Source: Asterias rubens (Eukaryota). From it: DNA of 64,000 bases. Each line of letters starts with the position of its first letter. Position 1 is the stretch's first letter. The notes below the pieces were generated by a model. That model had not been told where the DNA came from. It searched no databases and saw only the letters and a program-made list of their open reading frames with translations. The translations under genes were made by a program, and so were the position numbers. Shown piece after piece: positions 41,839 through 63,107 of this stretch. The stretch covers positions 10,168,001 through 10,232,000 of the forward strand of contig NC_047079.1 in the NCBI RefSeq assembly GCF_902459465.1, given 5' to 3'.

Positions 41839-41922
41839 CTCGATGATTGGAACAGAATAAGTCTTGTAGCTGCTGGCAATTGGTCTCTCTTGATGAACAA
41901 TCTTACCTGTGATTCCATTACC
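41839..41922 (-). CDS. HSPG2: Exon 19: LamB 2 part c
   Basis: GNGITGKIVHQERPIASSYKTYSVPIIE. Confidence 0.88.
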
Positions 41923-42500
41923 CTGTTGGCAGGCAGAACAAAAAGTATATTAACATAAAAATAATAATAAGGTTATCTATTAAAAAAACAAACAAATTGA
42001 TAAGGGAACAAAGTTCCTGACATGTTCGAAACAGTAAAATAGAGGAAATGGAGGTGGGCAGAACACATGAGGTTTAGAACAGATAACTTGGCAATCAAAC
42101 ACTGGATGCCATATGAAAACAAACAACAAAGAGGGCACCTGAGGAAAAGATGCATAAATAGGGGAGAGTCAGTTGGTACAAAATATAGACATTTGGAGGC
42201 ATCCTCCTGAAGGCTCGACATGACTTGAGTTCCCAGAAGCGCCGGGTTGCGATAACAGTGTTCTGGAAATGTTAGTCTTTCTGCACGGTTTTTGTCTTTA
42301 AGCCTGGGGAACCCGAGACCGAGATCTGAGGTTGTATATGTGTTCATCCCTCCCGACACCAAGCACCTGGCATAGCATTCTGGGGTAGCAACCACCAACC
42401 AAGTCAAACACTGTGCATAGAATGTATATGGAATGATCGGTCAACTCACTGAAAAAAAAAATTGCAACCTCGTGAGAGGTTTAGTAACAAAAACACTTAC

Positions 42501-42596
42501 AATCAGCAGGATATCCGGTTCCTGGTTGGTGAAAGTTGCTCCAGCGCCGTGTTGGTAAGTAATAGTGTACCGAAGATTACCACCATACGAAGACAC
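42501..42596 (-). CDS. HSPG2: Exon 18: LamB 2 part b
   Basis: VSSYGGNLRYTITYQHGAGATFTNQEPDILLI. Confidence 0.92.
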
Positions 42597-43123
42597 CTGC
42601 ACATACATTCAATGAAACCTATTAATGTATTGTACAAATATTGGGTCAAACTGATTGGGTAAATTCTAAGAAATTCTGGCTTGAACAAAGAAAAAGGGAC
42701 ATGATCGGGATTTGAACCTGCTCTATAAACTGAGATATCTCATCCTATAGTCGTCCATCATTTCAATCATTTCGGGAGTAAGATCCTTCGAGCACATTTT
42801 TACTCCCAAAACGGCGGACAAGGATGCGTGTTACTGCGCTGCGCATTGTGCAAGGGTAGAATGCTATTATATATTTGGTTTGCAGTAACACCATGTATGT
42901 ATCCACTTGCCAGGTTTGTTCTTTAGAGAACTGTCTTGCTATATAGTCTCCTACCGCAGAGGAGATTTATCGGATTGTTCGGGAGACTTCGCGGCTCTGA
43001 AAAGAACTGTCCTGCTTTTGAATTACTATACCTGGGCGGGAGGTATAGAAAACTGGCTGGGACTACTACTTAAGCTAATAGGATCGTAATTTACTGCACT
43101 ACCACAGAGTGAGTTCTTAAATT

Positions 43124-43157
43124 GGTCTTAACGTTTCGACTAGTCATCGTCAGGGGG
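43124..43157 (-). ncRNA. Degenerate minimal hammerhead motif (stem II collapsed)
   Basis: CTGACGA t GACTAGTC GAAA cgtt aagacc. Confidence 0.45.
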
Positions 43158-43188
43158 CCTATATTGGGTAGAATGCTTAGTTACTTAC

Positions 43189-43371
43189 TTTGTCACCAGT
43201 GAAGGTTTCAGGTAGGCTCCAGTAATAAGTCTGTGGTTCGAAGGATCGGAAGTTACTGAAGGTGAGCTCTCTTGAGAGAGGGCTGACGGCCAGTCCCTGG
43301 TCGATGACTGTGGTCCCTAGGCTATCAGACAGGACGAAACCTTGGTTGTTCTGGGTGAACACGGCTGAAAC
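43189..43371 (-). CDS. HSPG2: Exon 17: LamB 2 part a
   Basis: VSAVFTQNNQGFVLSD...FEPQTYYWSLPETFTGDK. Confidence 0.92.
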
Positions 43372-43517
43372 CTGACAACAAAAATGGGATCAAGAACCCT
43401 GTCAATTACTGACAAAAAAAGGACATTAGCTAGATTGCACACTCTGCTGATCAGAAACACCAGAGTTTGAATCAAGTGCCCTTAACCGCTCTGCCATGAC
43501 ATCTTATCCGTCCCTAC

Positions 43518-43658
43518 CTGTGATCTGTACTGGGTGGTGCTGGAACAGTCTCGGGTGACGCCCATGCAGAAGCAAGATACACACCCATCGGGCGTGTTGC
43601 TGTTAAGATGGAATGTGAACGGCTGACAACGGTCGCATTCCTCGCCATGTACATTGTC
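43518..43658 (-). CDS. HSPG2: Exon 16: laminin-EGF
   Basis: DNVHGEECDRCQPFTFHLNSNTPDGCVSCFCMGVTRDCSSTTQYRSQ. Confidence 0.93.
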
Positions 43659-44106
43659 CTGCAGGAATGGAATCAGAACTAAAGTTTAGTTGATGCTGTG
43701 GATATTACTCTGTATCCACAGCTGATAAGCCCGGTTCATACTTCCTGCGAATGCGATACAAATTTTGACGTCACAAGATCGCAACAAGAAAATTCGCGCC
43801 AGTTAACTTGTGTTCAACTCCTGCGAAACATTCGCGGCGAAAACAGGGCTGTGATTTCAAAATTCACTTCGCATTCGCAATTGGGATTAAGAGATTTGAC
43901 ATTAGGATGCAGACGCACTCTCTTTAACAAGTTCATCAGCTAAAAAAGTTTAGTGGATATTTGTGGATGTGTGTGGATACACTTTTTCAATCTGTGGATA
44001 CTGAATTTTTTCTTGGGAAATAGGCAGATCGCTCTTATCAATTGGATTTAAAGTAGCATTAAGGCTGATAGGGAACTAGACGAAAGTTCTAAGGGTCAGT
44101 GTTTAC

Positions 44107-44311
44107 CTTGCAGGCACACTCTGCACCAACCAGCTCCACTGTTCCATCCGAGTTGCAATTTTTGTCGTCCGGCACACAAGAGCTTCCGAAGTTCATCGGG
44201 TCTCCAGTATACGTTGGTGCGCACGTCTGGCACTGTCTACCATCGTACCCTTGAGGGCAGGCGTCGCAGGTGACCAAGCCATCATTGTCAAGGTAGCAAG
44301 TAGGGGAAAAT
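44107..44311 (-). CDS. HSPG2: Exon 15: laminin-EGF
   Basis: FSPTCYLDNDGLVTCDACPQGYDGRQCQTCAPTYTGDPMNFGSSCVPDDKNCNSDGTVELVGAECACK. Confidence 0.93.
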
Positions 44312-44611
44312 CTGGGCGGAAAATTTTAAAGGTTATTTCAAAGACCTTGATGTTCCTACTCGTCAGTTAGGTATTTTTCTCAAAAAATTATTCGTTTGTA
44401 GGAATACTGAAATCCCATCATTTCATAGTGAACGAAAACACAAGTGGAACATACGTGCAGACGTGCGCCTTAGAATATAAGTAAATTTCCTTGTTTTTGT
44501 GATAAAGAAAACAACTTATTACAGGAAGGGTCATACAGATTGTTTTTTTTTGTCAGTGTAAGGGTAATTGATAGATAAAAACACAAAAGATACACAGAGC
44601 TTTAGACTTAC

Positions 44612-44847
44612 TGGTTTGGGTCGATTGTGAGTGGGCAGGGGCAAGGCATGCACGGGATGGACGATAACGGATCACCAAAGTAACCCTCAGCGCACTGGTC
44701 ACATCTGTTGCCCGCTGTGTTGGCACGGCAGTTCAGGCAGGCGCCCGTCTCTGCGTCACACTGGACGGAGTAACCATTACACTCACACGGCTGGCAGGAA
44801 CCGAGGTAACGGTTGTCACGGACGCGGTAGTAACCCGAGTCACAATA
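44612..44847 (-). CDS. HSPG2: Exon 14: laminin-EGF
   Basis: YCDSGYYRVRDNRYLGSCQPCECNGYSVQCDAETGACLNCRANTAGNRCDQCAEGYFGDPLSSIPCMPCPCPLTIDPN. Confidence 0.93.
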
Positions 44848-45146
44848 CTAGTAGGAAAAAAAAAAACAGTGGAAATTGAGTCATTGTGAAGTTTTGACGT
44901 TTGTACTTTGGATATTTTCAGGAAACTCTACGAACAATTTTTGTGTGAAAATGTTTTACTCACTTCTCAAAAACTACAGCACCTCAGCAAGTAATATTTT
45001 AAGGTAAGGTTTCTATCATTATTATCTTTAAATCGTGTACTTGTAAGTTTAATGTAAATATGTGGACAGTTGAGTTTTGTGTCCTACAAAAAGTACCCTT
45101 ACCCTTTAGAGAAAACCTCATCCCTCGACATTTTAAATCTACATAC

Positions 45147-45258
45147 CTCACAAGATTGACCTGTGTAACCCAGAGGACACTCACACTTCTCCAACGAGAA
45201 GGCTTCGTCTCTCCCGTTGTTCTCTGCTTGAGCGCCATCAAGGTAAACATTGGAAAGA
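45147..45258 (-). CDS. HSPG2: Exon 13: LamB 1 end / LE
   Basis: LSNVYLDGAQAENNGRDEAFSLEKCECPLGYTGQSCE. Confidence 0.92.
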
Positions 45259-45820
45259 CTAAAAGAGGGGACAAATTGTTTCAAATGTTAATCAAAAATG
45301 AAAATTGCATCCCTTAAAGGAACACTTTGCCTTGGACCAGTCTAGTTGGTCTTTGAGCAAGATTGTTACCGTTTGTTATAAAATGCATATGGGTAGAAAG
45401 ATGTTGTAAAAGTAGAATACAATGATCCACACAAACATGCCTCGAAATTGAACAGTTTTACTTTTACCTCGTCGACTAACACGGTCGGCCATTTTGGGAG
45501 TCAAATTTAAAAAAAAAAAAACAATAAAAAAACACACAGATATTTACAAAATAGGGAGATTGCCAATAAACATGTACGGTTAGATAGCACAGGTAGTAGA
45601 GTGCCAGCACATTCATCTTGAGGTCGCGGGTTGAAATGCTACTCTATTCACTTTTTTATGTTTAACCCTAAATAATTTCTCAATGAAAATATCATGCTGA
45701 ACAAACCTATGAGATTTCATTCCAATTGTGGCTCTTCTTTTTTAACACACTCCAAAAATGCGTTTTATTAGGCCTTTAAAGATTCAGGTCCTAGTTTTAC
45801 TCTAAATTTACTCTAGCCCG

Positions 45821-45970
45821 CTGAAGGTGTTATGGCACTATATAAATACAGTTCTTTTATATTTTACTCTAGCCAGCTTTGTCATAATACCTTGTGTCCC
45901 GAGTGTTAGTGTTATACCAAGCTCTGATCAGGAATTTCTGGACGTTTTGAAGCGCCATCATTATTTCAAG
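45821..45970 (-). pseudogene. Duplicated 3' half of exon 12 plus donor and proximal intron (pseudo-exon)
   Basis: 45891-45970 reads LEIMMALQNVQKFLIRAWYNTNTRDT versus MEVMMVLQNVEKFLIRASYNTNTRET; identical ag|gtattatgacaaagc donor. Confidence 0.85.
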
Positions 45971-46105
45971 CTACCACCGTCTCACATTTCAAGACTACCT
46001 TATTTTCTTTGTGTTCTCCTAAGCGCTTACAGACTTTCCTCTGAAGGTGTTAGGCACTAAATACAGTTCTTTTTTATTTTACTCTAGCCCGCTTTGTCAT
46101 AATAC

Positions 46106-46233
46106 CTTGTCTCCCGAGTGTTGGTGTTATACGAAGCTCTGATCAGGAACTTCTCGACGTTTTGAAGCACCATCATTACTTCCATTCTTGTTGCTGGAGT
46201 CATTTGACTTCCTTCCTCTCTGATCCAACCATC
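46106..46233 (-). CDS. HSPG2: Exon 12: LamB 1 part c
   Basis: DGWIREEGSQMTPATRMEVMMVLQNVEKFLIRASYNTNTRET; phase 0-2. Confidence 0.9.
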
Positions 46234-46841
46234 CTAAACACAACATTTATTCAAAATTTTCAATAGAAAAACATCATTTTTAATATTCTTTTATTTACAA
46301 GCATGATATTTGGTCCTTGTAGTGAAAAGGAGGAACACATTGTTGAGCACAAGAGCTGACATACATGTTTTAACATGAGGTAAGTTTAAGTAGACCTCAG
46401 GCTATTTAAAGACAGTTTTTTTCTGATTTTTACAATGGCAGACAAATCAGAAATCAGACCAAGGAAGAAGGACATTTTGTCTGGATTTAATTGGGTTTTT
46501 TTTCTTTCGGGCACACAAAAAGGCTTCCTTGTGCGCAAATCCCAAAGGATTAACTAGCTCCTAGCACTTCTTATCAGCTTTCCATAAATTTCAAGACCAA
46601 ACTTTGAAATGTGAGCATAGCTGATTTAAACAAAAAAGTACTGACATTTCGACCCACACTCAGTCTTTCTCAAAGGAATTAAAGATTCTGCTATAGTCGA
46701 TACGTCAGGCTATTAGCTATTTTTATACATTTATACCATACATGTATAACATGTATAGATCCTTTTCGTTGGTAGCATGCAGTTCGAACAGCTAATTCAA
46801 TTTTTATTAGAAACACACTTTCTTTTTTAAAGATTTATCAC

Positions 46842-47027
46842 CTCGACAATTTTGACGCTGACTTCGTTGAATCGTGATTCTTCCATGCTCCGTCCGACTA
46901 CATAATTCAATCTCATCCCATTACCCTCTAGGATGACATCAGGGGTCAGGTCCGCCGCGATTGGTCGGCCACCGGATTCAGCGTTGAACCGAACGCGATA
47001 TTGCAATTCACCTCCATAGCTGGTCAG
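46842..47027 (-). CDS. HSPG2: Exon 11: LamB 1 part b
   Basis: LTSYGGELQYRVRFNAESGG...PDVILEGNGMRLNY...VSVKIVE. Confidence 0.93.
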
Positions 47028-47414
47028 CTGCAGAGAGAGACCAATATATATTGATAATAAATTTATTTCAGTGGACAGAAATTGTTTTATTTGGGGTGAG
47101 AAAGCACGGGGAATTGATAATATTGTGACTCGTTTCTCCTTATTCAAATAACCAATGCATGATCCCAACCTTCAAAACAATGTTGGCTTTGTTTGGTTTA
47201 AGGGTTTTAATCATAACTTATTTAAGAGATGTTAAATTTGCATCGGGGATAAAGAATATTAAAATTTAACCAAAATTAATATAACTTATTTATTTATCGT
47301 ATTATTTGTTTTAATTTTCATTATTTTTTTATTTTTTTAATTTTTTATTTTTTTTTGGGGGGGAGCTATTTAGAAGTAACTACAAATACACCCACCCCTA
47401 GAAACAAGAAATAT

Positions 47415-47652
47415 GTCAACGTGGTCAAGTGGTTGGACTGCAGGACTTGCAATCACAAGGTTGTGGGTTCGAATCCTACCAAGCTAACCGCTGGTTTCAC
47501 AATGACTAGAATAAGTATTGTCGCCTAGTTTCAGAATCACAATTTCTTGATTTATGTAAGAACCAACTGTTCTTTTGAGAGCCAACACTTCTCAAATGAG
47601 ATTTGCACACGGGTGCTACGCCAAACTCCATCTAAACAAACAAACAAACAAA
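47415..47652 (+). mobile_element. tRNA-derived SINE, family 2
   Basis: TGGTCAAGTGG ... GGTTCGAATCC ... atctaaacaaacaaacaaac. Confidence 0.75.
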
Positions 47653-47657
47653 TGTAC

Positions 47658-47861
47658 CCTATTTCCTAGCAGGGCATCAGGTAGCACCCAGTAGTACTCT
47701 CCGTTCGGTAGTCTGCGGTTCATATCCAACACAGTGACTTCATCTGTGCTGGGGTTGACCTGAACGAGGCTCTCGTCCACAGTGGTGATCGAACCGTCCA
47801 AACGAGACCGGGATCCGAGAAGAGTTCCTTGCGTATCGTCGTTTGAATAGATAAGTCCCAA
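47658..47861 (-). CDS. HSPG2: Exon 10: LamB 1 part a
   Basis: LGLIYSNDD...NRRLPNGEYYWVLPDALLGNR; phase 0-0. Confidence 0.9.
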
Positions 47862-48071
47862 CTACAAAAACAAAATTCAAAGAAGAAAACAAATTCTTTG
47901 ACTTTCTCTGAATAAAGGCACTGGACACTATTAGTGGTTACTCAAAATAATGTTGATCATAAAAACTTACTTGAGAACTGTTGGTAGTATAAAACATTGT
48001 GATTTCTTTCAATTTAACTCGATTTGATCTGGTTAACTAATGAATTATTATTTGTCTTTTTGTATAATCAA

Positions 48072-48165
48072 ATCATTAATCACTGAATTATTCATGTACC
48101 TATGGGCGATAGCAACCACTCCCAGTACATCTTGATGTGATGATGTCAAAGCAGAAGCATTCAAT
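48072..48165 (-). pseudogene. Duplicated 3' half of exon 9 plus donor (pseudo-exon with stop)
   Basis: 48100-48165 reads IECFCFDIITSRCTGSGCYRP* followed by gtacatg; copy of 48201-48290. Confidence 0.85.
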
Positions 48166-48227
48166 TTAAGTAGTAAACTAATGAATTATTCATACTCAAG
48201 TCATTAATCACTGAATTATTCATGTAC

Positions 48228-48352
48228 CTGTGTGCGGTAGTAGCCACTCCCAGTACATCTTGATGTGATGTCAAAGCAGAAGCATTCAATGCAGTCTTCA
48301 GGAAGCAGAGCTCCATTGTTGAATACATTACCGGTGCATATGCCCTCAGGTG
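48228..48352 (-). CDS. HSPG2: Exon 9: laminin-EGF start of domain III
   Basis: PEGICTGNVFNNGALLPEDCIECFCFDITSRCTGSGYYRTQ. Confidence 0.9.
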
Positions 48353-48881
48353 CTGTAGGTTATTTAGATAAATGAATATTCATGAGGTGCTGTAGGTTAT
48401 TTAAATAAATGAGTATTCATGAGCTTCATTCAAAGGATGATAAGGCTGTAGGGAATTTTTTTTTTTAAGATCACAAAAATGGGTTCCTTCAATGGAAGTC
48501 TCGATTCAAGAAACACAAAACCTATTTCACTATTTAGTTTAAGTGTCGCTACTGTTGTTGTTGTTTTTTGGGGGGTGGGGTTGGGATAAATAGGAAATTC
48601 CTTTTAGACGACAGGGGCAAAACGACCCTATCTATCCGAGTCAACTAATTTGCAAAGAAACCTTCACAACGTAAATAATGGTTTGGGGTTGAACAAAGAT
48701 ATTTTTACAAAAGCGGGATTTGAACCAACGACCTCCAAATTAACATGCCAGCACTCTACCAACTGAGCTACATGTATATCTAGCTATATTGTAGGTCTCC
48801 CTAATATAAATAATAAAACAACGTTGCAGTCCTTCCCCAAACAACCAATCTAAAGAGGAGGATGAAATGGTGTGAGCTTAC

Positions 48882-49023
48882 GGATAACAATGAGTATGGC
48901 GTCAGGAATAGCAAAGAGATATCCGATGCTGTTCATTGCTTCACATGTATAGGCTCCCTGGTCGCTCTCCTGGACGTTGTAAATAGTCAGCATACCACGG
49001 CCGTTCTCACTCACTGCTCTCGC
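48882..49023 (-). CDS. HSPG2: Exon 8: Ig C-half
   Basis: ARAVSENGRGMLTIYNVQESDQGAYTCEAMNSIGYLFAIPDAILIVI; FAIPD is typical of this perlecan Ig. Confidence 0.93.
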
Positions 49024-49367
49024 CTTGAAAAAGAAACAATCATTGTTTACAGATTGCAGTAATCTACAGCCCAAACTCAAAGGCACAAAAAAGTACCTAC
49101 CGCCAAGGTAGAAGTTAATATGTAGAACAGTTCTTTTTAGAACTGAGAAGTCTCACGAATTCCACAGAAATCTCTGCGGCGGCAGTAGAATAAATAGCAA
49201 GACAAGTTCTCAAAAGAACATAATTTACCAAGCAAGTAGATATATATGCGGTTTTACCGCAAACAAAATATCGATACCTCACCATAAAATGCCTCAAATC
49301 CCATCTATACCATGTTTGTCGTTGGTTACTATACAGAAATTCATGTCCTCAACAGAGTTACATGTTA

Positions 49368-50891
49368 GGCGCCTTGTCAAAACGTCCAAGCTGTTCCATT
49401 CCGCGTGCATTCTGCGGGAGTCCGCGGATTTTTGTAACAAAAGAACCCGTAGCAACCGGGAAGGTCCACGGCCACGACGGCTCATTTACATGTCAATAAA
49501 CATGAATATTCCGGCGGCTCTGCGGAGCGACCGGTCGGCTATTGTGAAGCCCAGCTTATTTAAATATCAATAAGCATGATCATACGGCGGCTCCGCGGAC
49601 CGGCTGCCGGCGGAACCGCGGAGGAACCCAGGTGGTGAACAATTGCTTTACCTTTGCATGGCAAAAGCAAACTAAGGGTGTGTAAAGCCATTTTCTCGTA
49701 CGAGTGATTTTTAAGGCTTGGTTACATGACCGAAACATGTGAATTGTAGAAATGGTTTGTTTAGGCAGGTCTATGGACCACATTAATTATTTTGCTTTTG
49801 TTTCTCCTAGCCCATCTGGAAGTATTTGTTGTATTTTAATCTAATGTTGAAATGGCAGAATAAGTAATAATAATAATAATAAATAATCTTAGTAATAATA
49901 GTAATAATTTCCATATTTTGGAGCAAGGTCAAAACGTCCTTTCTCTGTGACTACCACGCCGTTTCATAGTGTTTCGCTAGAATAGAAAACCTGACTTCCC
50001 AAACAATGCATCGTAGCCTCCCCCATACCCATGTATCGATCACTGTATCAATGACCCATCCACAACGTATTATGCAAAACTACCGCTAAACTGCAGTTCA
50101 TCCTAAATAAAATTTAAACACCAAACAATTACATGATGGTCCAACGTGTGTAATGCACAAATTAATGTTTTAATTCGGCCTCTGGCCGCGAAAACCTTTT
50201 ATTGTAAATAAACCATTAAAATGATCGGAATTGGCAGCCAGTGCAAACTTGTTTTTACAAAATTAAACTTTTATTAACTAGGGTGGCAAATATTTTACAT
50301 CGAATCAAACTTGTTTTTTTTATAGTAAGGGATTTATTTGGTGATGACGTACTCATAAAGTGATTAACATTTTGAGTTGTTTAGCCGGGACTCAACATAT
50401 TGTGCCTTTTCAAAAATACAAGCCTCGTGAATGCCTGTTTAATGCCTGTTGAATGCCTCTGGAATGTTGAGGTTCAAAGTCGCCGATTTGGTTGACTATC
50501 ATGTCTAAACATGTAGCTGGCGATTATCACGTGAGCAGGATGGTCGGCTGGCACTACCAACGTGCGTGGTACAATGATCTTGTCGGTGCAGCCTGTCCGC
50601 TTCCAGGACGATGGTACTCACTAGTTGCAAATGTACCATTCTGGGAGAGCACGGCCGGTCCGCGTCCAAGCCGCTGATATTCATGACCTGAAAATACAAC
50701 TTGTTTATTCATGAGACTTATTGTTATACCAACAATAGCGCCCGGCATGGATAGCTCATTAACTTCGCCGCGCTTCAACGCACATGGCCGTTCTTCCGCG
50801 GACTGTCCGAGGTCCTTAGCAACGGCGGTATTTGCTGTCCATTCCGCAGACTGTCAGCGGAGGAACGCCCGGGACGTTTTGACAAGGCGCC
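49368..50891. mobile_element. 1.5-kb non-autonomous DNA transposon, PIF/Harbinger-like
   Basis: Perfect 20-bp TIR GGCGCCTTGTCAAAACGTCC flanked by TTA and TAA; subterminal CCGCGG-rich repeats; no recognisable transposase. Confidence 0.75.
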
Positions 50892-50985
50892 TAAGTGAAT
50901 GTGCAAAAGTTTACAACTTTAGACACTCACTTTAAAAAGTACCAGTCGAAACTTGTCCATCAAACGACTAATTCTAATTTTTTAC

Positions 50986-51131
50986 CTTTGACGGGTCTGG
51001 CAATGGACCCCAGTTGAAACGCCATGAAATGATGGGAACCGGATTGCCCAGAGCAATGCAAGTGATGACTACCGTTGCACCCACGGTCACCGTCACCGGG
51101 GAACCGGGCGAAACAGTCACCTCAGGTTTGG
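50986..51131 (-). CDS. HSPG2: Exon 7: Ig (domain II/III junction), N-half
   Basis: KPEVTVSPGSPVTVTVGATVVITCIALGNPVPIISWRFNWGPLPDPSK. Confidence 0.93.
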
Positions 51132-52096: not shown

Positions 52097-52234
52097 AACA
52101 TCCAATCTCATCGGAGCGATCACTGCAGTCAAAGTCTTTGTCACACTGGTAAGCTTTAGGGATGCACTGCGTAGTCACTGTGTTCAAGCACTGAAACTCA
52201 GTAGAGGCACACGGGGAACCAGGCAAGGCGACCG
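52097..52234 (-). CDS. HSPG2: Exon 6: LDLa 3
   Basis: [45 protein letters not shown]. Confidence 0.92.
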
Positions 52235-52561: not shown

Positions 52562-52678
52562 GACAGTTGCGTTCTTCGCTTCCGTCTTCGCAGTCATCGT
52601 CACCGTCACATACCCAGATCTTCTGGATGCAGAACCCACTGGAACACTGGTACTCATTGGGTTCACAGCCAGCGGTAG
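52562..52678 (-). CDS. HSPG2: Exon 5: LDLa 2
   Basis: [38 protein letters not shown]. Confidence 0.92.
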
Positions 52679-53084: not shown

Positions 53085-53370
53085 TGATCTTCAAACTCAA
53101 CTCACTAAAATATTTATGCTCCTGGACCTAGGGAAGCAATATAAACTTACAGCAGCTAGATAATCTGAACCTCAAACTCAACTCTCAAAAACATTTATGC
53201 TCCTGGACGGAGGGAAGCAATATAAGGTTACGGCTCGTTACGCAGTAGCGACTTACAGCAGCTAGATTCAACTGATCCTCAAACACAACTCTCTAAAACA
53301 TATATGCTCCTAGAAGGAGGGAAGCAATATAAGGTTATAACTTACAGCAGCTTGATTCATCTGATCCGTC
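53085..53370 (-). repeat. Tandem repeat (about 3 units of 80-105 bp) including the last ~22 nt of exon 4 and its donor
   Basis: acttacagcagct(a/t)gat occurs three times, GT donors at 53149-50, 53255-56 and 53344-45; flanking gctcctgga..gggaagcaatataa is repeated. Confidence 0.85.
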
Positions 53371-53510
53371 ATCACAGTCCAGTGCCCCATCACAGCGATA
53401 CGACAACGGTATACACTGACCGCTCCTGCATGTAGCTTGGTTCTGGTTGCATTGACCGGGGGACAGAGTGGTGGTCCGAGTTGGTGCCGTGCTTGGGGAT
53501 GGGGGAAGAG
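53346..53510 (-). CDS. HSPG2: Exon 4: P/T-rich linker + LDLa 1
   Basis: [54 protein letters not shown]; phase 1-1. Confidence 0.92.
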
Positions 53511-56500
53511 CTACAAAACATACAAAACCATAAATGAATTATGACAGTGCAAATAGTTTTACGGCCCCAGCTTTTGGTATTATTAGAAGGCAAAATATTC
53601 TTCACATGGCTTCATTTTATTTGTTTATTCTGGTTGTGAAGCCACAGACTCTCCGACCAGCGAACTGAATCACTATATACCTTTATCATACTGCCTCCAT
53701 CTTGGTCATGTGCCTCGTATCGAGTAACAATAACGAATGCTAATAATCGTTTTGCTAAAAGAAACCAGACTACTGTTTTCTTCCAGCCTCGGTTTGGTAA
53801 CACTGATATAAATGGGAGAAATTCAAAGATGGCTGCACCATGATAACGGTCTATACAAGCCAAGAACCCAATGGAGAGAAAACAAGGAAGGGCGTTTCAG
53901 TTTTATAGATGTGTGAGGAAAACCCCAGAGAATTATTCAAGGGATAAGTAGGGACTGAGAAACCCAATCCACATAGTTCCCTTGGAGGAATTCGAATCAA
54001 GGTCGTAGAGGTGGAAGGCCAGACATGAAAACATTGTGCCAACCTAGCTGACATCCCCCCCCAACCCCCAGATAGAATGGAACACTGCAAAACTGCATTG
54101 TAATGTAATACTTCAGAATGAAATACTGGCCAAAATAAATTGCATTTAATCTTCATGTTCATTCTCTTCTTAAACAAAGCAAGAACAAATACTCAAATAT
54201 CATGAATAACACATTTGATTTAAAAGGTACATAAACACACATGTCAAAGCACTAGCAGTAGGTGTTTTCTGTAAGTAATTAATTTGAAACAAAATGGTGT
54301 TGAAAAGAAAAATAAGATCAAGTTAATAATCATGAACAAACAAGGATTCCCAAAGAAAACCGAAAAGACCAAAAATCCATTATAAATAGCTTATCCTGTT
54401 GGTAGGTCATTATGTCACATAAGCCGCGCATTTGACTCGTCCCGTCCAAAGTTGCGCCTAACTTCTGGCTTGTGCACGTGCCACACCACGTTACTAAGCC
54501 TTCTCCGCTTACACAGCTAGCCCATAGATTCAGCAGTTGCTCTGTAAGCGAAGAATGGTGATCGCAAGCGCAGAATTCGGCGGAGAGCAGAGCCATGAAA
54601 TTTTACCCTGACAGGCAAGTGAAAAGTTTTAATCCTGCAATGCATTTCCTATGGCTTCCGCTAATCGCCAGCTGGACAGTTTACAAGACATTTGGCGTAA
54701 GCGTGGCTTACATCGTAGTTTCATTATACTTACCAACAGAATTATCCTGTGGTCAACACACATGCATAGTTAATAGTTATATGATTCACTCAAAACAAAG
54801 AAAGCCAGGTTAAGATGGGAAGAAAAGAGAACGGATTAAATCGTATTAAGAATGTTCCTTTGTCACCTGTGAAAGTTAAAAAGAAAGTGATTAATTATTT
54901 GTTAACAAGAAATGAATCCCAAAGAATCATGCAAATACCACGCATGTTACTGGAAAGTTATTTTCAGAGAAATTATTTTGATTAATCAATCAAGAGTAGA
55001 CGGAAGAAAGGAATGCAAAAAATTACTTTTACAAATGCATAAATATAATCAAATATTTTAAAAGGCACATTAAATGGTTGTTCTAAAACGAAGCGTTTCG
55101 GGGGCAAGTAATACTATGTATAGGAGTATCTGACAATTAAAATTATAAGAAAACTAAACTTACCATGCCTAACATTAACAAATATTAATAAACATACAGC
55201 TAAGAAATCATATTAATTTTAAAGATTGCTCAACACATTATTTCTCTGTCGGCATTTGGTTAGCATACCAACCTAAAATCTGCCAGTAAGCAGCAAATAT
55301 GCTAGTTTGTGTATTGGTGAACAATTATATATTTTGGCTTGTTTCTTTATTGTAAATGTTTGCCTAGTTTCGGTTTGTTATTGTCTTTTATCCATACATT
55401 ATATGTTATACACTGTATACTTTAAGAAAGTCCTGTGAAAAAAATCCACAGGCACATTACCCTGGTGGAATTGGAACCCACGACCTTTGACATTCTAGAG
55501 CAGGTGTCTTACCACTCGACCACCGAGTTTGCCCAGTAGCTTATAGAGGCAGTTTTAACCTATATTTTAGAAGCATGTACCTCAACATGTTAAATTTGCA
55601 TCAGAAGATTGTCTTTTAGATTTAAAAGACGTGTGTTACGTTATATGTTATACCGCCCTCTTGTGTTGGTAACTATAGGCAGTTGCCATGCGAGCAGCCA
55701 TCTTGCTACACTGGAAGTGAGAAACTTTTGGAAGATTGTGCTACGACTGCAAATGATTATTGATGATCAAGATGAACTGGTCTGTAAGTAGTTCCAAAAC
55801 CTTGCTGATTCACAGGAAACGACCAAGTGAAAACCTGATGTTTGACACATCCCTTTTTGGCGCAGGAAGACCGCACAAAAACGATATCATCCACTACACC
55901 TACTGTAGTTCCATAAGTCCAGGTCTGCATGTCGTTATGAAACCTCAGGAGAATTTCACACGCTAACACCACAAGATTTTCAGGGCCAGGGAATCTGCAT
56001 GTTGGCATGCCTTCTCCTCCTCGAACAGTTCCCCCGTCTCATGCTGCCTTGTCCGAAAGAGCCAACCTTCTTCTCCTTCCATCTGCCTTCCCAAACTCCA
56101 GCCCGACATCCTGCGATGCATTTTGAACATTTGGAAAGTTCATTCGATCAAATGGCAGACAACCCTTCCCTCAAAAAAGGTGCCTGTTCTGTAGCTTTTT
56201 CCTCAGACTGTTGCTGGGCTTCCTAGTGCAGCGGAAAAAAGTCCCGGTAAAAGTTCAGTAGAGGCTGAGAGATCACACCAATTCTAGAATATCGACCACT
56301 ATTTCTGTCAAAAGTCACCAGGAAGTTTCCCCGATAGCGATAGACGTACTGATAACAGTTATTTGTCTGCTAATTGACAATCATTTTCGTCTATCAAAAC
56401 ATTGTCTAGTCTAAGACTTCCTGTTCAGCAGACGATTAGTGCATCCTAAAATAAAAACTGCACCTCTCTACAAAATGACCTTAGTACAGTGGCAGGAGAT

Positions 56501-59500
56501 TGGAAAGACAATACTTCTAAAGAGTTACGTGGCAAAAAGTTATTATCGGCGCTTTCTTTCCACCAAAAATTCCAGAGTCCCAATCCCTACCCAATCTCCC
56601 TCCTTCCAATTGTCACATTTCAAAATGATTGATTTGCAAGAAATCCAAATACAGTAAAATGACCCGAGGACCCCGACAACTGGAACTTTTTTGTTCAAGT
56701 GTAAGTTCATTGCTCCCAACTCCAAGCTAACGGCTCTAATTTCACAATGACTAGAATAAGTAATGTCGCCTAGTTACTGAATCACAATTTCTTGATTTGT
56801 GCAACTCTTAAACTTTTACGAGAGATATTGGCTGTTGCCAGCTTGATGTTTATATCCCCTTGTGGTAGAAAGCCAAGTTCCCTTTATGGGAAGATCATCT
56901 AAACAAACTTTGTAAACCACTGCCAACTCAAATTTTGTATATGACTTCTAAATAAAAAAGTTGACAGAACAAAGTGGGACGAAAAAGTGACAGAACAGTG
57001 AAACAACAAGCTAACTTGCAAGTCACCGTTACTGTTAAGGGAGAGGTGCTGTATTTCTTAGCTCTTCAAAATATAAAAACAAAATAGGTCCACGCTTTAT
57101 CTGGATGAATGCTAAGAATACACTTCTGACACTTTGTGTACAATTTTATACACTTAAAGCCTCCATGAATCTTTTGTTACCAAGGAAACGATAAAAGGTC
57201 ATGACCTGCCCATTTAAAAAAAATCATTCATCAAAAACTTGTAGAGCAAACATTTCATTCAACTATCTTGCTCAAGGATGACAAGGGAATGTTTGTGGAG
57301 TACATGAAGAACTTTTGAGTCAAAATCACAAAGTAACAATTTGTTTGCTCTGGTTTAAAGAGGGGCTCCCAGGTCAAATTGAGTTTTTTTATGCACTCAT
57401 TTTCCTATAGATAGAGTTGTCATGAAAGTGGGGGGAAAGTTACAAGTCTCTCACCTCACGTTAAAATGGTATAAATTATCGATATAGTTTCAGGACGAAA
57501 ATTGAATCACGATGTCAGACAGCAAAAACGAACTGATCTGTCGTTTCAAAGAGGAATTGTTTGCACCAGTCAGACGGTCAAATCTAATAACCTTTAGATT
57601 GAATATCATCAAAATTCAGGAACACACTAAACAATTCCCTGTAAATTTGAATTGTGACGTCATCAAATATTTTGGGATTTTGAAAAAAATTGCACTTGAA
57701 GGGTATCAAAAACAGTCGCGTTTTATACCATTTTTACCTTGAGTTCAGAGACTTGACACTATTTTTTATCATTTTTATGATGACTCTTTCTATTGGTAAA
57801 CAGGTGCATCACGAAACAGACTTTGACTTTGGAGTCACTCCTTCATGACTTTGAGTGATGTTAGGCTCATTAATTGAAACATCCTGTGACGATAAATGAG
57901 ATCATTTATTGTCCGATGACATTTATGAACAATGCACAACATGATGACAGTTTGAACTACCGTTCTTGAGCGTTTAATCGCTAACATCCAGCAAGGAAAA
58001 AGCATATGACCTAGACCTTTTTTTACTCCCTTTCATGACAATGTTATCTTCCCCATCTGGAAATTCTCGTCCTAAATGTTCACATTAATTAAATCTGTTT
58101 AATCTTAAATGTGGCATGGAATTTCTTGTGCGGGGGAATGTTAAGGCAGATTAAAAATGTTGTTTCCCGCAGAAAATTGAACGATGGTACTCAACTTCAA
58201 ATTTGCTTCATGTACTGATACAGTATGTCCAAACCAAAATAATTTGTTTTTTTAAGTCCCGTGGATTAATTTCATTGCTTGAAAAATATCAGGGTACCGT
58301 GTCGTAACTCAGGAAATATTTGTACTGACATCGAGAATGTAATTGCAGTTTTGTCAACAGAAAAAAACGAGGTACCAGGGACAACCATTTGCTAAACTGC
58401 CCTCAACTGGAGCAACCCTGCATAGCTGAAGGCCTTGAAATTCTTTTCATCTTTGGCCGAACCCTGGACAGAATAAGCACAGGCTTTGATGTCTAATTTA
58501 TATATTTACAAAAGCACAGCCAACATTTGTTTTTTAAATGATTTTAGTAAAATTTCCCCCCAAAAGGTGTTTCTTCTGATGCTTATTAAATTTAAAGTCT
58601 GTTTATTCAGCGTTTTTCCTAAACACCAAAGTCTTAACTCTTCATAAAACCAAATCGGACAACTTTGGTATCATTCAGAGCAGCTGGTGAGAGCAATTCT
58701 CCATCATTGGTTTGGATGAAATGAATTTGGTGCCTCGTTATTAAGTCTGGTGTCCCGTGTCTTGGAGCAGAACAGACATTCTTTTGCAAGAACCACAAGT
58801 TGTGAGATTTGCTGAACCTTGGTTTGTAACGTACAGCGACCTTTCCGTAAAATAAAATAAATCAATAATTGAATACGAGCGCTATAAAATTACCCGGATC
58901 TAAGATAAATCAACTGGGCTAGCCAATACAAAAAGTACAGATAATGTTTCTTTAAAAAACAAAAGTTGAAATGCTTTATTAAAAAGGTGGAATTTGTGCC
59001 AACCCAGATACTCAATTTCCCTACACAAAATAGAAGTCAATGTTTGTAAATAAAAAGAGAGGTTTATAAGACATATGTTTTTCATTTGACTTTATAAATG
59101 TGGAGCATGATAACAATTTACAAAGATATGTTGAAAAGGATTTAGGATATTTGGTTCGTGGAAAAAGATGGATTTTTATTGAGTACGTGGGCAAAGCTAC
59201 ATTTCCTTTACTGTATGTTGATTCCCTCTTGTGCGCCTTGTGCGCCTTGCGCACCTAAATTTTTGTTGGATAAATATTCTTTGTTGTTATTAGCCTACTA
59301 TTATTATTATTTAATCACAACTTTTTCAGGTTCAATAAAAATCAGACTCGAGTAGGAAGAATGCAATTCCTGATTTGGACTTCTTATTATGACGCTCACC
59401 CCTTAAGGTTTTAACATCTTTTTGTTAGCTACGGTTGATCATTATACCATGTCCGAATCCAATAAATTTGGCTACGGCTATTGCCAATGACCAAGGAACT

Positions 59501-61025
59501 AAAGAGCAACAGTCGTAGCTGTAGCCACCAATTCTACAGCACAATATTGCTGTTTCACATGGGGAACCAGACACAAAATAATGTGAGTACCTTGGGGTCC
59601 CAAAGGAGTTTTCTGCTCTGGGATGACACAGTTTAAATGACAGTTGAATAACCTAATAACTAGAATAAAACCAATGAGTCTCCACCAGCGAACACTTCAA
59701 ATAATTTGGTCACGTTCCTCTCTATGGAGACAGATTATCGTAGCGACCTCTTGACAATAAAAAAAGGTCAACACTGTGACCTCTTAAAGGCAAGGTACCT
59801 TTTAAGATAATTCAATATGAAATTGGTCTGATGGAAGTAAATTTGCTCCGTAAAGCTGGCCAAGATATAAAATATCTTTGATGTAAAACTGTCTTTTGCT
59901 GTTTCCATTTTTTTATTTTTTTTACTCTCATCTGCAGAAAATAACTGGACTTAATGTGAAGGTTGAAATTTCGTTCAAATGATTTTTGGAAACTCAGTCT
60001 GGTTCAGCGAAACTGGTAAGCACAGAAATATGCTAAGAAAGTACTGCAAACCTTTCCATATAAGAAAGTACTGGTTACCAGCCTAAAGTCTTTATAACTT
60101 CCATTGGCAACTTATTGTAAACCGTGCCAGAAGTGGGGCCTGAGTTTCATTGGTTATGTCATCAATCAAGTGACTTGTTTAAAATTTACTTTTGATGTTA
60201 AAAAAAAAATAATCTGGTTTTTGTTTTTATTATTTGTTATTGATGATATTTTGAGGTAGATTATTCCAGAGAATGAGTTTCAGAGAAAGAGAGAGCCAGA
60301 GACAGATGTTGAAGTCAAAGAAGTATTAAATATTAAAGATTTCAGAGGAAAAAAAACTGTAAGTTTGCGAAGACTGAAAAACAAATCCAGCGGAGTGTTA
60401 GGCAGGAAACTGGTTTAAACCAAGGCCCAGAAAAAAAAAACGAAAGAAAGAAAATATAACACAAATCCCAGTTGATTTAAAGAGTAAGTAAACATGTGTT
60501 ATTGGGCCCCAAATTCATGGTGCTGTTTATCAAGGAATTCTGCATTTACAGTGCCCAGGAGAGCACGTAATTGTATTATCTGTAAGCGCATAATTCCCTG
60601 GTAAGCCGAGCCATGGAATTGGGACACGGTTATAGTCTTTGTTGCGATAGACTTGTGATTGAAATATTATTATGAGCATCATTCCAAGGTATATTTTGGT
60701 TAATTTTGTTTTATTACATAAACCTTCACCTTTTAGTGATTCCAAATCCAAGTTTAAAATTGGTGTCAAATCCAACCTACAGCTGGAGCAATTCTTCAAA
60801 ATCCTTTCCCTTAAGTCTTCTAAACTTTGATTTAGGATGGACTGCGTCACATTCCAAAGGTTTGAGCGCTTCAGTTATCAGAACCCTAAAGGGTTCTATT
60901 GGATTTTGAAAGATTGCGAGCCAAAATTCTGAAGAAGATAGGGGGGGATTCAGGGTGCTAACATTTTGTTAATAGAAGACGTAGTTCCACCACAAGTTTA
61001 GGAGAGTTTCCAACAGTGTCCCTAC

Positions 61026-61280
61026 CTCTGGAGATAACAACGCGGAACATGCACGTTGCGCTATTTCCACTGTTGTCAGTGAAAGTGTACTTGACCATCG
61101 ACTCTCCAATTTGGAAAGACGTATTTGGCGTGTGAGTTCTTGATACACGCACTGGTGCCCCGTCATTGTCCATTGCGGTGGGCTCTGTCCACACAATGTC
61201 AATGTCATTCATGTTGGCTGGGGCTGTTTCTAGTATATCCGACGGGCAACCCTGAATAACTGGCGGTGTGGTGTCTCGCT
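61026..61280 (-). CDS. Exon 3: HYR domain
   Basis: Phase 1-1, 255 nt; RDTTPPVIQGCPSDILETAPANMNDIDIVWTEPTAMDNDGAPVRVSRTHTPNTSFQIGESMVKYTFTDNSGNSATCMFRVVISR. Confidence 0.88.
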
Positions 61281-61342
61281 CTGTCCAAGTTAATAAGGGT
61301 CAAGATTTTGGAGCTGGTTATCATTTTTCTGATCCTTTCTTA

Positions 61343-61521
61343 AGGCCCGGTCCCACTGCAGCGCTAACGAGAACGATAACGATAAGGACGCCAAGAGAAC
61401 GTGTTTTATTGGTTGAATTGCTCCACGCAGAATACGCACACGCTCATTCAACCAATGGAATGCGTTCTCTTTGCGTCGTGATCGGTATCGCTCTCGTTAT
61501 CGCTGCAGTGGGACCGGGCCT
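61343..61521. mobile_element. Harbinger-like MITE with TTA TSD
   Basis: TTA|AGGCCCGGTCCCACTGCAGCG ... CGCTGCAGTGGGACCGGGCCT|TTA; relative at ~32690-32847. Confidence 0.8.
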
Positions 61522-62038
61522 TTATGAAAGTATGAACTGTTTTGGTTCAAGGCTTTCAGCTGCCTTACTGCATTTTGGTTGTGGTGTAATTTAAATTCAC
61601 CTTTAAGAACTTGGTATTTTCGTCTCTTAAATAGTTTTATGCAAGGCCAATAGACAGTGCAATTTTAAGTGGGGGCTGCAACTGAAAAAATGTCTATCGC
61701 TCTCCTTAAGCTTTTAGCCTGGCAGATATGTTCCACACTCGAATTGTTTCCTCATTTTCAATACACCCATGACTTGCACAGTCTGCTCAGCAAAGAATGG
61801 AAGTTTTGTTCATGCTGATGTTTTTTAAGTTACAGAATTTGATGACTGTTCAGTTAATTTTGATACTGAATTATGAAACAAATGATGATTATCAGCTTAT
61901 GATTCAACCAATGAAATGACAAGAAAGTTAATGTTAGCGCAAAATAAATTTGTATACAAGTAAAAAGTTTTGTCTCGACCCTATATGAGTGTTTTTTTTA
62001 TGAAATCAGTTTTTTTAAACAGAGTACCACACAAGTAC

Positions 62039-62293
62039 CTTCTCGGATCAGCACGAAAAACATGCAGACAGCCACATTTTGGCTGGTGTCCGTAAATTCG
62101 TACACGACTCTAGTGTAGCCAAGCGGTAATGCGGACAAGGGGGCGTGCGTACGAGAGACACGCACAGGCTGACCGCTATCGTCAGTGGCTGTCGGCTCGT
62201 CCCAAACTGCAATACCCTGCTGGTCACCGAACCTCGCAGACCCAAGCACAGTGTCCGGGCAGCCTGTTATAACTGGTCGGGTGTTGTCGACAT
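62039..62293 (-). CDS. Exon 2: HYR domain
   Basis: Phase 1-1, 255 nt; VDNTRPVITGCPDTVLGSARFGDQQGIAVWDEPTATDDSGQPVRVSRTHAPLSALPLGYTRVVYEFTDTSQNVAVCMFFVLIRE. Confidence 0.88.
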
Positions 62294-62849
62294 CTACATG
62301 TAACGTGTTGTTAAAGGGATGGTAAAATCAAATCATCAAAAGGTTTAAACTTGGTCTTTAAAACATGATAAATCTCTTCATAAATCAAATTTGATAAACA
62401 TTACTTCATACTACATACAATAAAGGGGCATTTAAAAATGAACAAAGACTTGCTTTGTGTCTTACAAGCATACCAATTGTTGATTTTAGTTAATATGTAT
62501 TCATTGCTTTGCCTCTTTATCATCCTACATATACAGTCATTATGACAAGGTTGCTGGGACTGGCCAAATAAATTACCTCTTTATAACAGGAACCTTGTTA
62601 TAATAGGACAGCAAAACAAAGGAAAAAAAAGCAGAAATGAGATTCGGGACTTCAGATTATACTCTCCGTAAGCAGAACCTCTTTACAACAGTGCTCTCTA
62701 TAACAAAGATTGACTGTATACTATACAAACAAACGTACAAACACACTAATACAAAAATACTACAATAACAAATAAAGATCTAAAAAAAAATTATTCAAAG
62801 GCAAAATTTCTTTTGTAAGACACAGGATTACATAACTCCCATATCCTAC

Positions 62850-63107
62850 CTCTTCTTATATCAATGACGAAGCTGCATATTGCCTCATTCCCACTAGTAT
62901 CTACGAAAAAATACTGCACGGTCGTCGACCCCTCGATGAAATACGTATCTGGTTCGTGGGTTTTCCCTATGGTGACCGACTGACCACTGTCGTCAGTCGC
63001 AGTGGGCTCCTCCCACGTAACGTACGCTTGATTCGTACCAAGGGCAGCTCTCCCGACGATGTCCCTCGGGCATCCAGAGATGATCGGTGGTGTCGTGTCT
63101 CTTTCCT
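62850..63107 (-). CDS. Exon 1 in window: HYR domain
   Basis: AG/GT, phase 1-1; ERDTTPPIISGCPRDIVGRAALGTNQAYVTWEEPTATDDSGQSVTIGKTHEPDTYFIEGSTTVQYFFVDTSGNEAICSFVIDIRR fits the HYR pattern. Confidence 0.88.

What the first reader, a model, noticed from the sequence alone, without database searches (positions are those of the whole stretch)
53346..63107. Candidate HYR-perlecan chimera: three tandem HYR exons upstream of the LDLa domain
Seen: three symmetrical phase 1-1 HYR exons (255-258 nt) lie on the same strand, 7.5 kb upstream of the first LDLa exon, which also starts in phase 1. Splicing 61026 to 53510 gives an open frame (..[21 protein letters not shown]-LDLa). I found no terminal exon, no signal-peptide exon and no SEA domain or Ser-Gly-Asp cluster in between. 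Known: vertebrate perlecan starts with domain I (SGD heparan-sulfate sites plus SEA), and HYR repeats typify echinoderm hyalin of the apical hyaline layer. Inference: this lineage may have a perlecan with a hyalin-repeat N-terminal arm, joining apical-matrix and basement-membrane modules, probably by phase-1 exon shuffling.
Basis: partly seen in the sequence, partly recalled or inferred. Interest (0 to 1): 0.78.

Follow-up and report, generated by a model that had tools for sequence, protein, structure and literature searches.

The report
Sea-star perlecan with optional HYR cassettes
The three HYR exons are real, optional one-domain exons inside the perlecan gene of the sea star Asterias rubens; this sea-star-specific variant is already in automatic gene models but I found no paper describing it.

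Summary
Observation confirmed. Three phase 1-1 HYR exons lie on the minus strand at 63107-62850, 62293-62039 and 61280-61026. They sit 7.5 kb upstream of a phase 1-1 linker+LDLa exon at 53510-53346.

The window lies entirely inside the ~121 kb perlecan-like gene of Asterias rubens. RefSeq isoform X1 maps residue for residue onto 62 exon blocks of the window.

Interpretation partly supported. The HYR exons do belong to perlecan, but they are not an N-terminal arm that replaces domain I. Full-length models read: signal peptide, acidic Ser-Gly stretch, weak SEA match, two LDLa, then 0-4 HYR, a Thr/Pro linker, three LDLa, Ig, and domains III-V.

The HYR exons behave as skippable cassettes:
- A. 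amurensis isoforms carry 4, 3, 2, 1 or 0 HYR.
- A. rubens isoforms carry 3, 2 or 0.
- Acanthaster isoforms carry 6, 5, 1 or 0.
- Patiria isoforms carry 1 or 0.

No A. rubens isoform uses it; those use 62039 to 53510.

No HYR was found in the sea urchin, brittle star, hemichordate, amphioxus, vertebrate or mollusc perlecans retrieved.

RNA data show the LDLa exon is expressed and has no upstream partner within 53.5-59.3 kb. I did not see junction reads.

This is a lineage-specific variant of a known protein and is of moderate interest.

The parts
62850..63107 (-). HYR1 cassette exon (258 nt, phase 1-1). It is the second HYR repeat of the protein; HYR0 lies upstream of the window.
   Evidence: AG/GT flanks. 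Pfam HYR E = 1.2e-21. The translation is an exact substring of A. rubens isoforms X1, X2 and X3.
62039..62293 (-). HYR2 cassette exon (255 nt, phase 1-1).
   Evidence: AG/GT flanks. Pfam HYR E = 2.8e-15. Exact substring of A. rubens X1-X3. In those isoforms it is joined directly to the exon at 53510 (..FFVLIRE-A-LPPSPS).
61026..61280 (-). HYR3 cassette exon (255 nt, phase 1-1). It is intact but absent from every A. rubens RefSeq isoform retrieved.
   Evidence: AG/GT flanks and an open frame. Pfam HYR E = 9.5e-24. It differs at 1 of 84 residues from the orthologous repeat in A. amurensis isoforms X1, X2 and X4, where it is joined to the linker-LDLa exon.
53511..61025 (-). 7.5 kb intron between HYR3 and the linker-LDLa exon. 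It holds dispersed repeats.
   Evidence: No signal-peptide-like exon and no Pfam domain. No splice joint from 53510 into 53511-59339 in four RNA data sets. No Rfam or tRNA match.
53346..53510 (-). Thr/Pro linker plus LDLa exon (165 nt, phase 1-1). It is the third LDLa module of the protein and the common acceptor for all the alternative upstream exons.
   Evidence: Pfam Ldl_recept_a E = 7.8e-13. Expressed in runs X1, X3 and X12. Exact substring of all four A. rubens isoforms. Five different upstream partners are modelled in A. amurensis.
52562..52678 (-). Fourth LDLa exon.
   Evidence: Pfam E = 4.5e-13. Exact mapping of P0279 residues 654-691.
52097..52234 (-). Fifth LDLa exon.
   Evidence: Pfam E = 1.4e-10. 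Exact mapping of P0279 residues 693-737.
820..51131 (-). The rest of the perlecan gene in the window: Ig, three laminin B / laminin-EGF units, the Ig repeats, and LamG/EGF. The gene runs on past the left end of the window.
   Evidence: 62 exact exon blocks cover P0279 residues 427-3589 of 3828. Pfam Laminin_B, EGF_laminin, I-set, Laminin_G and EGF match window exons.

Best explanation
The window lies inside the perlecan (HSPG2-like) gene of the sea star Asterias rubens.

In sea stars, a tandem array of one-domain HYR exons sits in the intron between the second and third LDLa modules, just upstream of the conserved Thr/Pro linker exon. Asterias has four such exons, three of them in this window.

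Each HYR exon is symmetrical (phase 1-1), as are the flanking LDLa exons. Any subset can therefore be skipped or included without breaking the reading frame. The donor of every upstream exon ends in G and can pair with the single acceptor at 53510, always giving Ala.

The result is a family of perlecan isoforms with 0 to 4 HYR modules between the glycosaminoglycan-bearing N-terminal region and the rest of the protein.

Shown here: the exon anatomy, the identity with RefSeq isoforms, the domain order, and the restriction to sea stars among the proteins retrieved.

Inferred, not shown:
- The array arose by shuffling of an exon from an echinoderm hyalin-type gene, followed by tandem duplication.
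- The modules add spacer length or hyalin-type adhesion sites.
- HYR3 is actually included in A. rubens transcripts.
For: - Pfam and splice anatomy of the exons.
- A. rubens isoform X1 (XP_033642061.1, P0279) maps exactly to 62 exon blocks of the window, including HYR1, HYR2 and the linker-LDLa exon.
- The gene spans about 121 kb in both GCA_902459465.3 and GCA_032118995.1. The upstream neighbours are a Kelch/BTB gene and a pseudouridine synthase gene, not a hyalin gene.
- Isoform sets differ by whole HYR units. A. amurensis has 4/4/3/3/2/1/0, A. rubens 3/3/2/0, Acanthaster planci 6/6/5/1/1/0 and Patiria miniata 1/1/1/0.
- Junction peptides show five different upstream partners for the same acceptor.
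- The domain order is SP, Ser-Gly stretch, SEA (weak), LDLa x2, HYR x n, linker, LDLa x3, Ig.
- The linker-LDLa exon is well above the intronic background in RNA contigs. Depth is 98-130 against 5-8 in run X1, and about 11 reads in run X12. There is no joint into 53511-59339.
- Contigs from two runs both end exactly at 53511. That fits a branch between a partner ending ..TG(T/C)-G (the upstream LDLa exon..SRC) and partners ending ..AG.
- RNA-labelled runs hold 0.18-0.27 of the sampled words of 60900-63300. I calculate 0.29 if all three exons are present and 0.19 for two.
- HYR0 groups with the first HYR of Acanthaster and Patiria (60-73% identity, support 86). HYR3 groups weakly with the last Acanthaster HYR.
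Against: - I saw no junction-spanning read or contig. The loose-end table of the single read-laying run was filled by a repeat at 56.7-56.9 kb, so the letters upstream of 53510 were not shown.
- RefSeq isoforms are automatic predictions, and I could not inspect their read support.
- HYR3 is missing from all four A. rubens isoforms.
- Junction and HYR3 patterns were not found in JGI metagenome contigs.
- No fragment proteins spanning a junction were found.
- The SEA match is below Pfam's gathering score (22.9 against 26.4 bits).
Confidence: 0.88

Rival explanations
1. Two separate genes. An upstream hyalin-like gene ends after HYR3, and perlecan starts from its own signal-peptide exon inside the 7.5 kb gap. 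The joined models would then be read-through or annotation chimeras.
For: The 7.5 kb gap is longer than most introns of this gene. No junction reads were seen.
Against: - The perlecan-type N-terminus lies upstream of the HYR exons. It consists of a signal peptide, a DEGYLP motif shared with Diadema perlecan, a Ser-Gly stretch, a SEA-like region and two LDLa modules, so the HYR exons are internal to the gene.
- There is no signal-peptide exon, stop-bearing terminal exon or joint in 53.5-59.3 kb.
- HYR-less isoforms splice across the whole array.
- Four species give the same architecture.
Confidence: 0.03
2. The HYR exons are rarely used or are splicing noise. Sea-star perlecan would then be essentially the HYR-less form, and the many isoforms reflect low-level inclusion picked up by the annotation pipeline.
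For: No direct read counts for the HYR exons were obtained. HYR copy number and inclusion differ between species. HYR-less isoforms exist in all four species.
Against: - All three exons keep open frames, both cysteines and their splice sites.
- A. rubens and A. amurensis differ at 1 of 84 residues in HYR3 and 2 of 85 in HYR1 (by eye from the sequences printed), against 98.1% identity for the whole protein.
- HYR0 is kept at 60-73% identity across two sea-star orders.
- RNA-labelled contig sets hold about as many words of the HYR region as its exons contain.
Confidence: 0.08
3. HYR3 specifically has fallen out of use in A. rubens and is only used in A. amurensis. If so, the reader's junction 61026 to 53510 does not occur in this species.
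For: - None of the four A. rubens isoforms holds HYR3.
- Its acceptor has a poor pyrimidine tract (..cttattaacttggacag).
- A 77-nt-arm inverted repeat lies about 60 nt upstream of the acceptor.
Against: - The exon is intact and differs at 1 of 84 residues from the used A. amurensis exon.
- Run X1 holds 0.27 of the region's words, more than two exons can supply (0.19).
- The A. rubens annotation is older, so it may rest on less RNA data. That last point is my inference from the accession numbers.
Confidence: 0.25

Closest known systems
Perlecan / HSPG2 (vertebrate), trol (Drosophila), UNC-52 (C. elegans)
   Same: The module order is the same: Ser-Gly/SEA region, LDLa array plus Ig, three laminin B / laminin-EGF units, an Ig repeat array, and LamG/EGF at the C-terminus. 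From my own knowledge, alternative splicing of repeat exons is also known in this family, for example the Ig repeats of UNC-52.
   Different: A block of 0-4 HYR modules interrupts the LDLa array (1-6 in other sea stars, depending on species). None of the non-asteroid perlecans retrieved has HYR.
Echinoderm hyalin and hyalin-like multi-HYR proteins (for example A. rubens LOC117289582, sea urchin hyalin)
   Same: The same Pfam HYR module, with 45-48% best local identity to the perlecan HYR block. That is the same level as between the perlecan repeats themselves. Their isoform lengths also step by 84 residues (5304, 5388, 5472, 5556), which suggests the same one-exon-one-domain cassette design.
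   Different: Hyalin-type proteins are made of dozens of HYR repeats with EGF modules and lack LDLa, laminin B and LamG modules. The perlecan array has at most 6 repeats and sits inside a basement-membrane proteoglycan.
Other lineage-specific insertions in the perlecan N-terminal region (amphioxus thyroglobulin type-1 repeats; expanded LDLa arrays)
   Same: Extra modules lie between the N-terminus and the laminin-like region. Amphioxus isoform P0005 has three thyroglobulin-1 repeats. P0004, P0008, P0011 and P0033 have 8-14 LDLa modules.
   Different: The inserted module type differs. Here it is HYR, and it is used as a graded cassette series.
SVEP1/polydom and SRPX, vertebrate and cnidarian HYR-bearing matrix proteins
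   Same: HYR modules embedded in a mosaic extracellular matrix protein (PMC12549020).
   Different: The partner modules differ (Sushi, EGF, pentraxin, vWFA) and there is no relation to perlecan. Only one or two HYR modules are present, and I know of no evidence that they are cassette exons.

Membership tests
Perlecan / HSPG2 | Domain II: LDLa modules followed by an Ig module | tested here: met
   Three LDLa exons and an Ig exon lie in the window. Pfam finds five LDLa stretches plus Ig in the full-length models.
Perlecan / HSPG2 | Domain III: laminin B (domain IV type) modules alternating with laminin-EGF | tested here: met
   Pfam Laminin_B E = 6.3e-11 and EGF_laminin E = 9.5e-11 on window exons. 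Exact mapping of P0279.
Perlecan / HSPG2 | Domain IV Ig repeat array and domain V LamG/EGF | tested here: met
   I-set E = 7.7e-14, Laminin_G_1 E = 1.3e-21 and 1.1e-15, and EGF matches. The LamG exon's best matches are perlecan-type proteins, including ones named as basement membrane heparan sulfate proteoglycan core protein.
Perlecan / HSPG2 | Domain I: signal peptide, acidic Ser-Gly glycosaminoglycan sites and a SEA module | tested here: inconclusive
   This region lies outside the window. In P0279 and P0270 there is a hydrophobic N-terminus, an ..EEGSGSD..EGSGTE.. stretch, and a SEA match at 135-191 with E = 9.6e-05 and 22.9 bits, below the 26.4-bit cutoff. Glycosaminoglycan attachment cannot be tested with these tools.
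HYR domain (PF02494) | A module of about 81 residues matching the Pfam profile above the gathering score, with two conserved cysteines | tested here: met
   77.3, 56.8 and 84.0 bits against a cutoff of 21.7. C12 and C77 are invariant in the three exons.
Hyalin (hyaline-layer protein) | A protein built mainly of long tandem HYR arrays, located in the apical hyaline layer | tested here: not met
   Only 0-4 HYR modules, within a 3572-3916 residue perlecan. Hyalin-like proteins are separate genes on other contigs. Location cannot be tested here.
Alternatively spliced cassette exons | Symmetrical phase, so that skipping keeps the frame | tested here: met
   All three HYR exons and the acceptor exon are phase 1-1. 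The HYR-less junction ..SRC-A-LPPS is in frame.
Alternatively spliced cassette exons | Transcripts with and without the exon in the same organism | tested here: inconclusive
   RefSeq isoform models with and without each exon exist. Contigs of two runs break exactly at the shared acceptor. Junction reads themselves were not seen.

The most novel reading that the evidence does not exclude
Sea stars regulate how many HYR cassettes perlecan carries, by tissue or physiological state (for example embryo versus adult, regenerating arm, mutable connective tissue). The inserted HYR modules would give the basement membrane a hyalin-type cell-adhesion site that no other animal perlecan has.
Probability: 0.25. 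Interest if true: 0.55.

Novelty: new variant of a known kind. Interest (0 to 1): 0.36.

Why it matters
Perlecan is one of the few basement-membrane proteins shared by nearly all animals, and its module order is usually described as conserved. [quoted passage not shown]

The sea-star gene shows a clean, datable case of phase-1 exon shuffling into that conserved scaffold. It was followed by tandem duplication, and the new exons are used as a graded series of optional modules.

It offers a simple, testable system. One primer pair should give a ladder of products 255-258 bp apart. That could show whether module number in a matrix protein is regulated.

It does not change the picture of what perlecan is, and the isoforms are already in RefSeq as automatic predictions.

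Tried and rejected
1. Searching 1.84 billion representative proteins with the LamG exon. The 150 best were perlecan-like, but none had HYR and none was close to the window. The sea-star proteins were hidden inside 50% clusters. This briefly looked like evidence against the fusion and was not.

2. Read laying on 53340-59339. It showed expression of the acceptor exon and no nearby partner. The loose-end letters at 53510 were pushed out of the table by a highly represented repeat at 56740-56939.

3. Exact junction 26-mer and a HYR3 32-mer in JGI metagenome contigs: no match.

4. Word-index protein search with the HYR3 reading frame, looking for transcript-fragment proteins that span a junction. 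It found only two unrelated HYR fragments.

5. A signal-peptide exon in the gap. Seven weak candidates turned up (the best starts at 54763 with a donor at 54712). None is convincing, and no joint was listed from 53510 to any place in 53511-59339.

6. Fetching the full loci of A. rubens and A. amurensis. Ka/Ks and the upstream exon map could therefore not be computed.

7. Searching with the HYR block for other HYR-bearing perlecans. The list was swamped by hyalin-like giants.

8. Rfam and tRNA scans of 53.3-64 kb: nothing.
Full report
**What is in the sequence**

On the minus strand there are three exons with AG acceptors and GT donors: 63107-62850 (258 nt), 62293-62039 (255 nt) and 61280-61026 (255 nt). 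Each begins and ends in phase 1. Each encodes one complete HYR module, with Pfam PF02494 E-values of 1.2e-21, 2.8e-15 and 9.5e-24, all far above the gathering score.

The three exons are 48% identical to each other. Thirty columns are invariant, including both cysteines.

The next coding exon downstream is 53510-53346 (165 nt, phase 1-1). It encodes a Thr/Pro-rich linker followed by an LDLa module.

The 7.5 kb between them holds no Pfam-recognisable coding piece and no convincing signal-peptide exon. It has no Rfam or tRNA match either.

**Which gene and which organism**

The rest of the minus strand, down to about position 820, carries LDLa, Ig, laminin B, laminin-EGF, many Ig, LamG and EGF exons.

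A search with a sea-urchin perlecan-like representative (P0001) returned RefSeq proteins named 'basement membrane-specific heparan sulfate proteoglycan core protein-like'. Three of them, from Acanthaster, Patiria and Asterias, carried PF02494 among their precomputed domains.

The cluster of the Asterias protein holds isoforms from two assemblies: XP_0336420xx on GCA_902459465.3 (Asterias rubens) and XP_0718052xx on GCA_032118995.1 (Asterias amurensis).

A. rubens isoform X1 (P0279, 3828 aa) maps without a mismatch onto 62 exon blocks of the window, covering residues 427-3589. The translations of HYR1, HYR2 and the exon at 53510 are exact substrings of it.

The window is therefore a piece of the A. 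rubens perlecan-like gene. That gene spans about 121 kb and runs beyond both ends of the window. Its upstream neighbours are a Kelch/BTB gene and a pseudouridine synthase gene, not a hyalin gene.

**Where the HYR block sits**

The full-length models read as follows:
- a hydrophobic signal sequence;
- an acidic stretch with Glu/Asp-flanked Ser-Gly pairs;
- a weak SEA match (residues 135-191, E = 9.6e-05, below the Pfam cutoff);
- two LDLa modules (about 264-341);
- HYR0, which lies upstream of the window;
- HYR1, HYR2 and HYR3;
- the Thr/Pro linker, three LDLa modules and Ig;
- the laminin-like, Ig and LamG regions.

The HYR block is therefore an insertion inside the LDLa array, not an N-terminal arm. 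A domain-I-like region is present upstream.

A Thr/Pro-rich linker lies at the corresponding position between LDLa modules in the sea urchin Diadema and the brittle star Amphiura, which have no HYR. This places the insertion in the intron just upstream of the linker exon.

**The exons are optional cassettes**

Isoform lengths differ by whole HYR units. A local HYR profile counts the following:

| Species | HYR modules per isoform |
|---|---|
| A. amurensis (X1-X7) | 4, 4, 3, 3, 2, 1, 0 |
| A. rubens (X1-X4) | 3, 3, 2, 0 |
| Acanthaster planci | 6, 6, 5, 1, 1, 0 |
| Patiria miniata | 1, 1, 1, 0 |

The peptides just before ALPPSPS.. show that in A. amurensis five different upstream exons are joined to the same acceptor: the second LDLa exon, HYR0, HYR1, HYR2 and HYR3.

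This differs from the window's prediction by one Val/Ile.

In A. rubens the modelled partners are HYR2 (62039) and the second LDLa exon. HYR3 is in none of the four isoforms. HYR3 in the window is nevertheless intact and differs at only 1 of 84 residues from the A. amurensis exon. The whole proteins are 98.1% identical.

**RNA evidence obtained here**

RNA-labelled contig sets of the window's species hold both the HYR region and the LDLa region. The shares of sampled words for 60900-63300 are 0.27, 0.21 and 0.18. I calculate that three exons can supply 0.29 and two exons 0.19, so run X1 probably holds all three. This is only suggestive.

It gave four results:
- The exon at 53510-53346 is well covered: contig depth 98-130 in X1 and 16-19 in X3, and about 11 reads in X12. 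Intronic contigs in X1 have depth 5-8.
- No joint from 53510 to any place within 53511-59339 is listed. The joints table only lists joints seen in three or more reads (or in a contig), so this rules out a well-used first exon in that stretch rather than any use at all.
- Contigs of two independent runs end exactly at 53511. That is expected if the assembly graph branches there. All modelled partners end in G. The second LDLa exon ends ..TG(T/C)-G, while the HYR exons and the unspliced intron end ..AG.
- The letters upstream of 53510 were not shown, because the loose-end table was filled by a repeat at 56740-56939.

I therefore have no direct junction read. Pattern scans of JGI metagenome contigs and a search for fragment proteins found nothing.

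**Distribution and origin**

The perlecan-like proteins of the following groups have none:
- sea urchins (Lytechinus, Diadema);
- a brittle star (Amphiura);
- hemichordates;
- amphioxus;
- sharks, bony fishes, amphibians and reptiles;
- molluscs.

Sea cucumber and crinoid perlecans were not clearly among the hits, so the insertion is dated only to before the split of the lineages of Asterias and of Acanthaster/Patiria. From my own knowledge of echinoderm classification these are the orders Forcipulatida and Valvatida.

In a tree of the repeats:
- HYR0 groups with the first repeat of Acanthaster and Patiria (60-73% identity, support 86).
- HYR3 groups weakly with the last Acanthaster repeat.
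- Acanthaster repeats 3 and 4 (the fourth and fifth of its six, counting from 0) are 89% identical, which indicates a recent duplication.

The first and last members of the array therefore look old, and the middle has expanded independently.

The nearest HYR modules outside perlecan are in giant echinoderm hyalin-like proteins, at 45-48% best local identity. One is an A. rubens gene whose isoforms step by 84 residues. This is consistent with capture of a phase-1 HYR exon from that family, but no donor can be named.

**How it most likely works**

Every exon from the second LDLa to the fifth LDLa is phase 1-1, and each HYR exon encodes one self-contained, disulfide-bonded module. The spliceosome can therefore include any run of them.

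The protein gains 0-4 extra modules between the region expected to carry glycosaminoglycan chains and the rest of the molecule. This part follows from the anatomy and the models.

What the modules do is inference. From my own knowledge, HYR is an Ig-like module and the HYR repeat of sea-urchin hyalin supports cell adhesion. The likeliest effects are therefore added adhesion sites and a longer spacer.

**Comparison with what is known, and novelty**

The gene meets the perlecan architecture for domains II to V. Domain I is only weakly supported.

It is not a hyalin. It is not a chimera in the sense of a fused or read-through gene.

Perlecan N-terminal regions vary between lineages. Amphioxus has thyroglobulin repeats and several invertebrates have 8-14 LDLa modules, so an insertion here is not out of character.

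I found no paper describing HYR in perlecan. A 2023 review says echinoderm perlecan resembles the vertebrate one.

The isoforms are, however, already public as automatic RefSeq predictions. I rate the finding a new variant of a known kind, of moderate interest.

Noticed in passing
window 53084-53337 (minus-strand intron just downstream of the donor at 53346): A 107-nt unit is repeated in tandem, with 3 copies of a 66-nt core. Each copy carries a degenerate copy of the last ~20 nt of the LDLa exon plus its GTAAGT donor, so the real donor is followed by two or three look-alike donors.
   Followed up: partly
window 61342-61522: An inverted repeat with 77-nt arms (87% complementary, 27-nt loop) lies about 60 nt upstream of the HYR3 acceptor. 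A similar reading frame at about 32662-32949 suggests a dispersed MITE-like element. It could affect HYR3 inclusion; this was not tested.
   Followed up: partly
window 56740-56939 and 53540-53939: These short stretches have contig word depth in the thousands in RNA-labelled runs, and many different loose ends. They are dispersed repeats present in many transcripts. There is no Rfam or tRNA match. They crowded the loose-end table of the reads tool.
   Followed up: partly
window about 13500-14020: A long imperfect microsatellite, which reads as TPTLTP.. or PHPNPH.. in open frames, lies inside an intron between Ig exons. It coincides with the GC-skew peak in the 12001-14000 bin of the composition profile.
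   Followed up: no
P0005 (amphioxus perlecan-like isoform), residues about 700-900: Three thyroglobulin type-1 repeats sit in the N-terminal region of an amphioxus perlecan isoform. This is another lineage-specific module insertion in the same part of the protein.
   Followed up: no
A. rubens LOC117289582 (P0297-P0313, another contig): This is a giant HYR/EGF protein with isoform labels up to X36 (13 listed). Their lengths step by 84 residues (5304, 5388, 5472, 5556), which suggests that one-domain HYR cassette splicing is common in echinoderm HYR genes.
   Followed up: no
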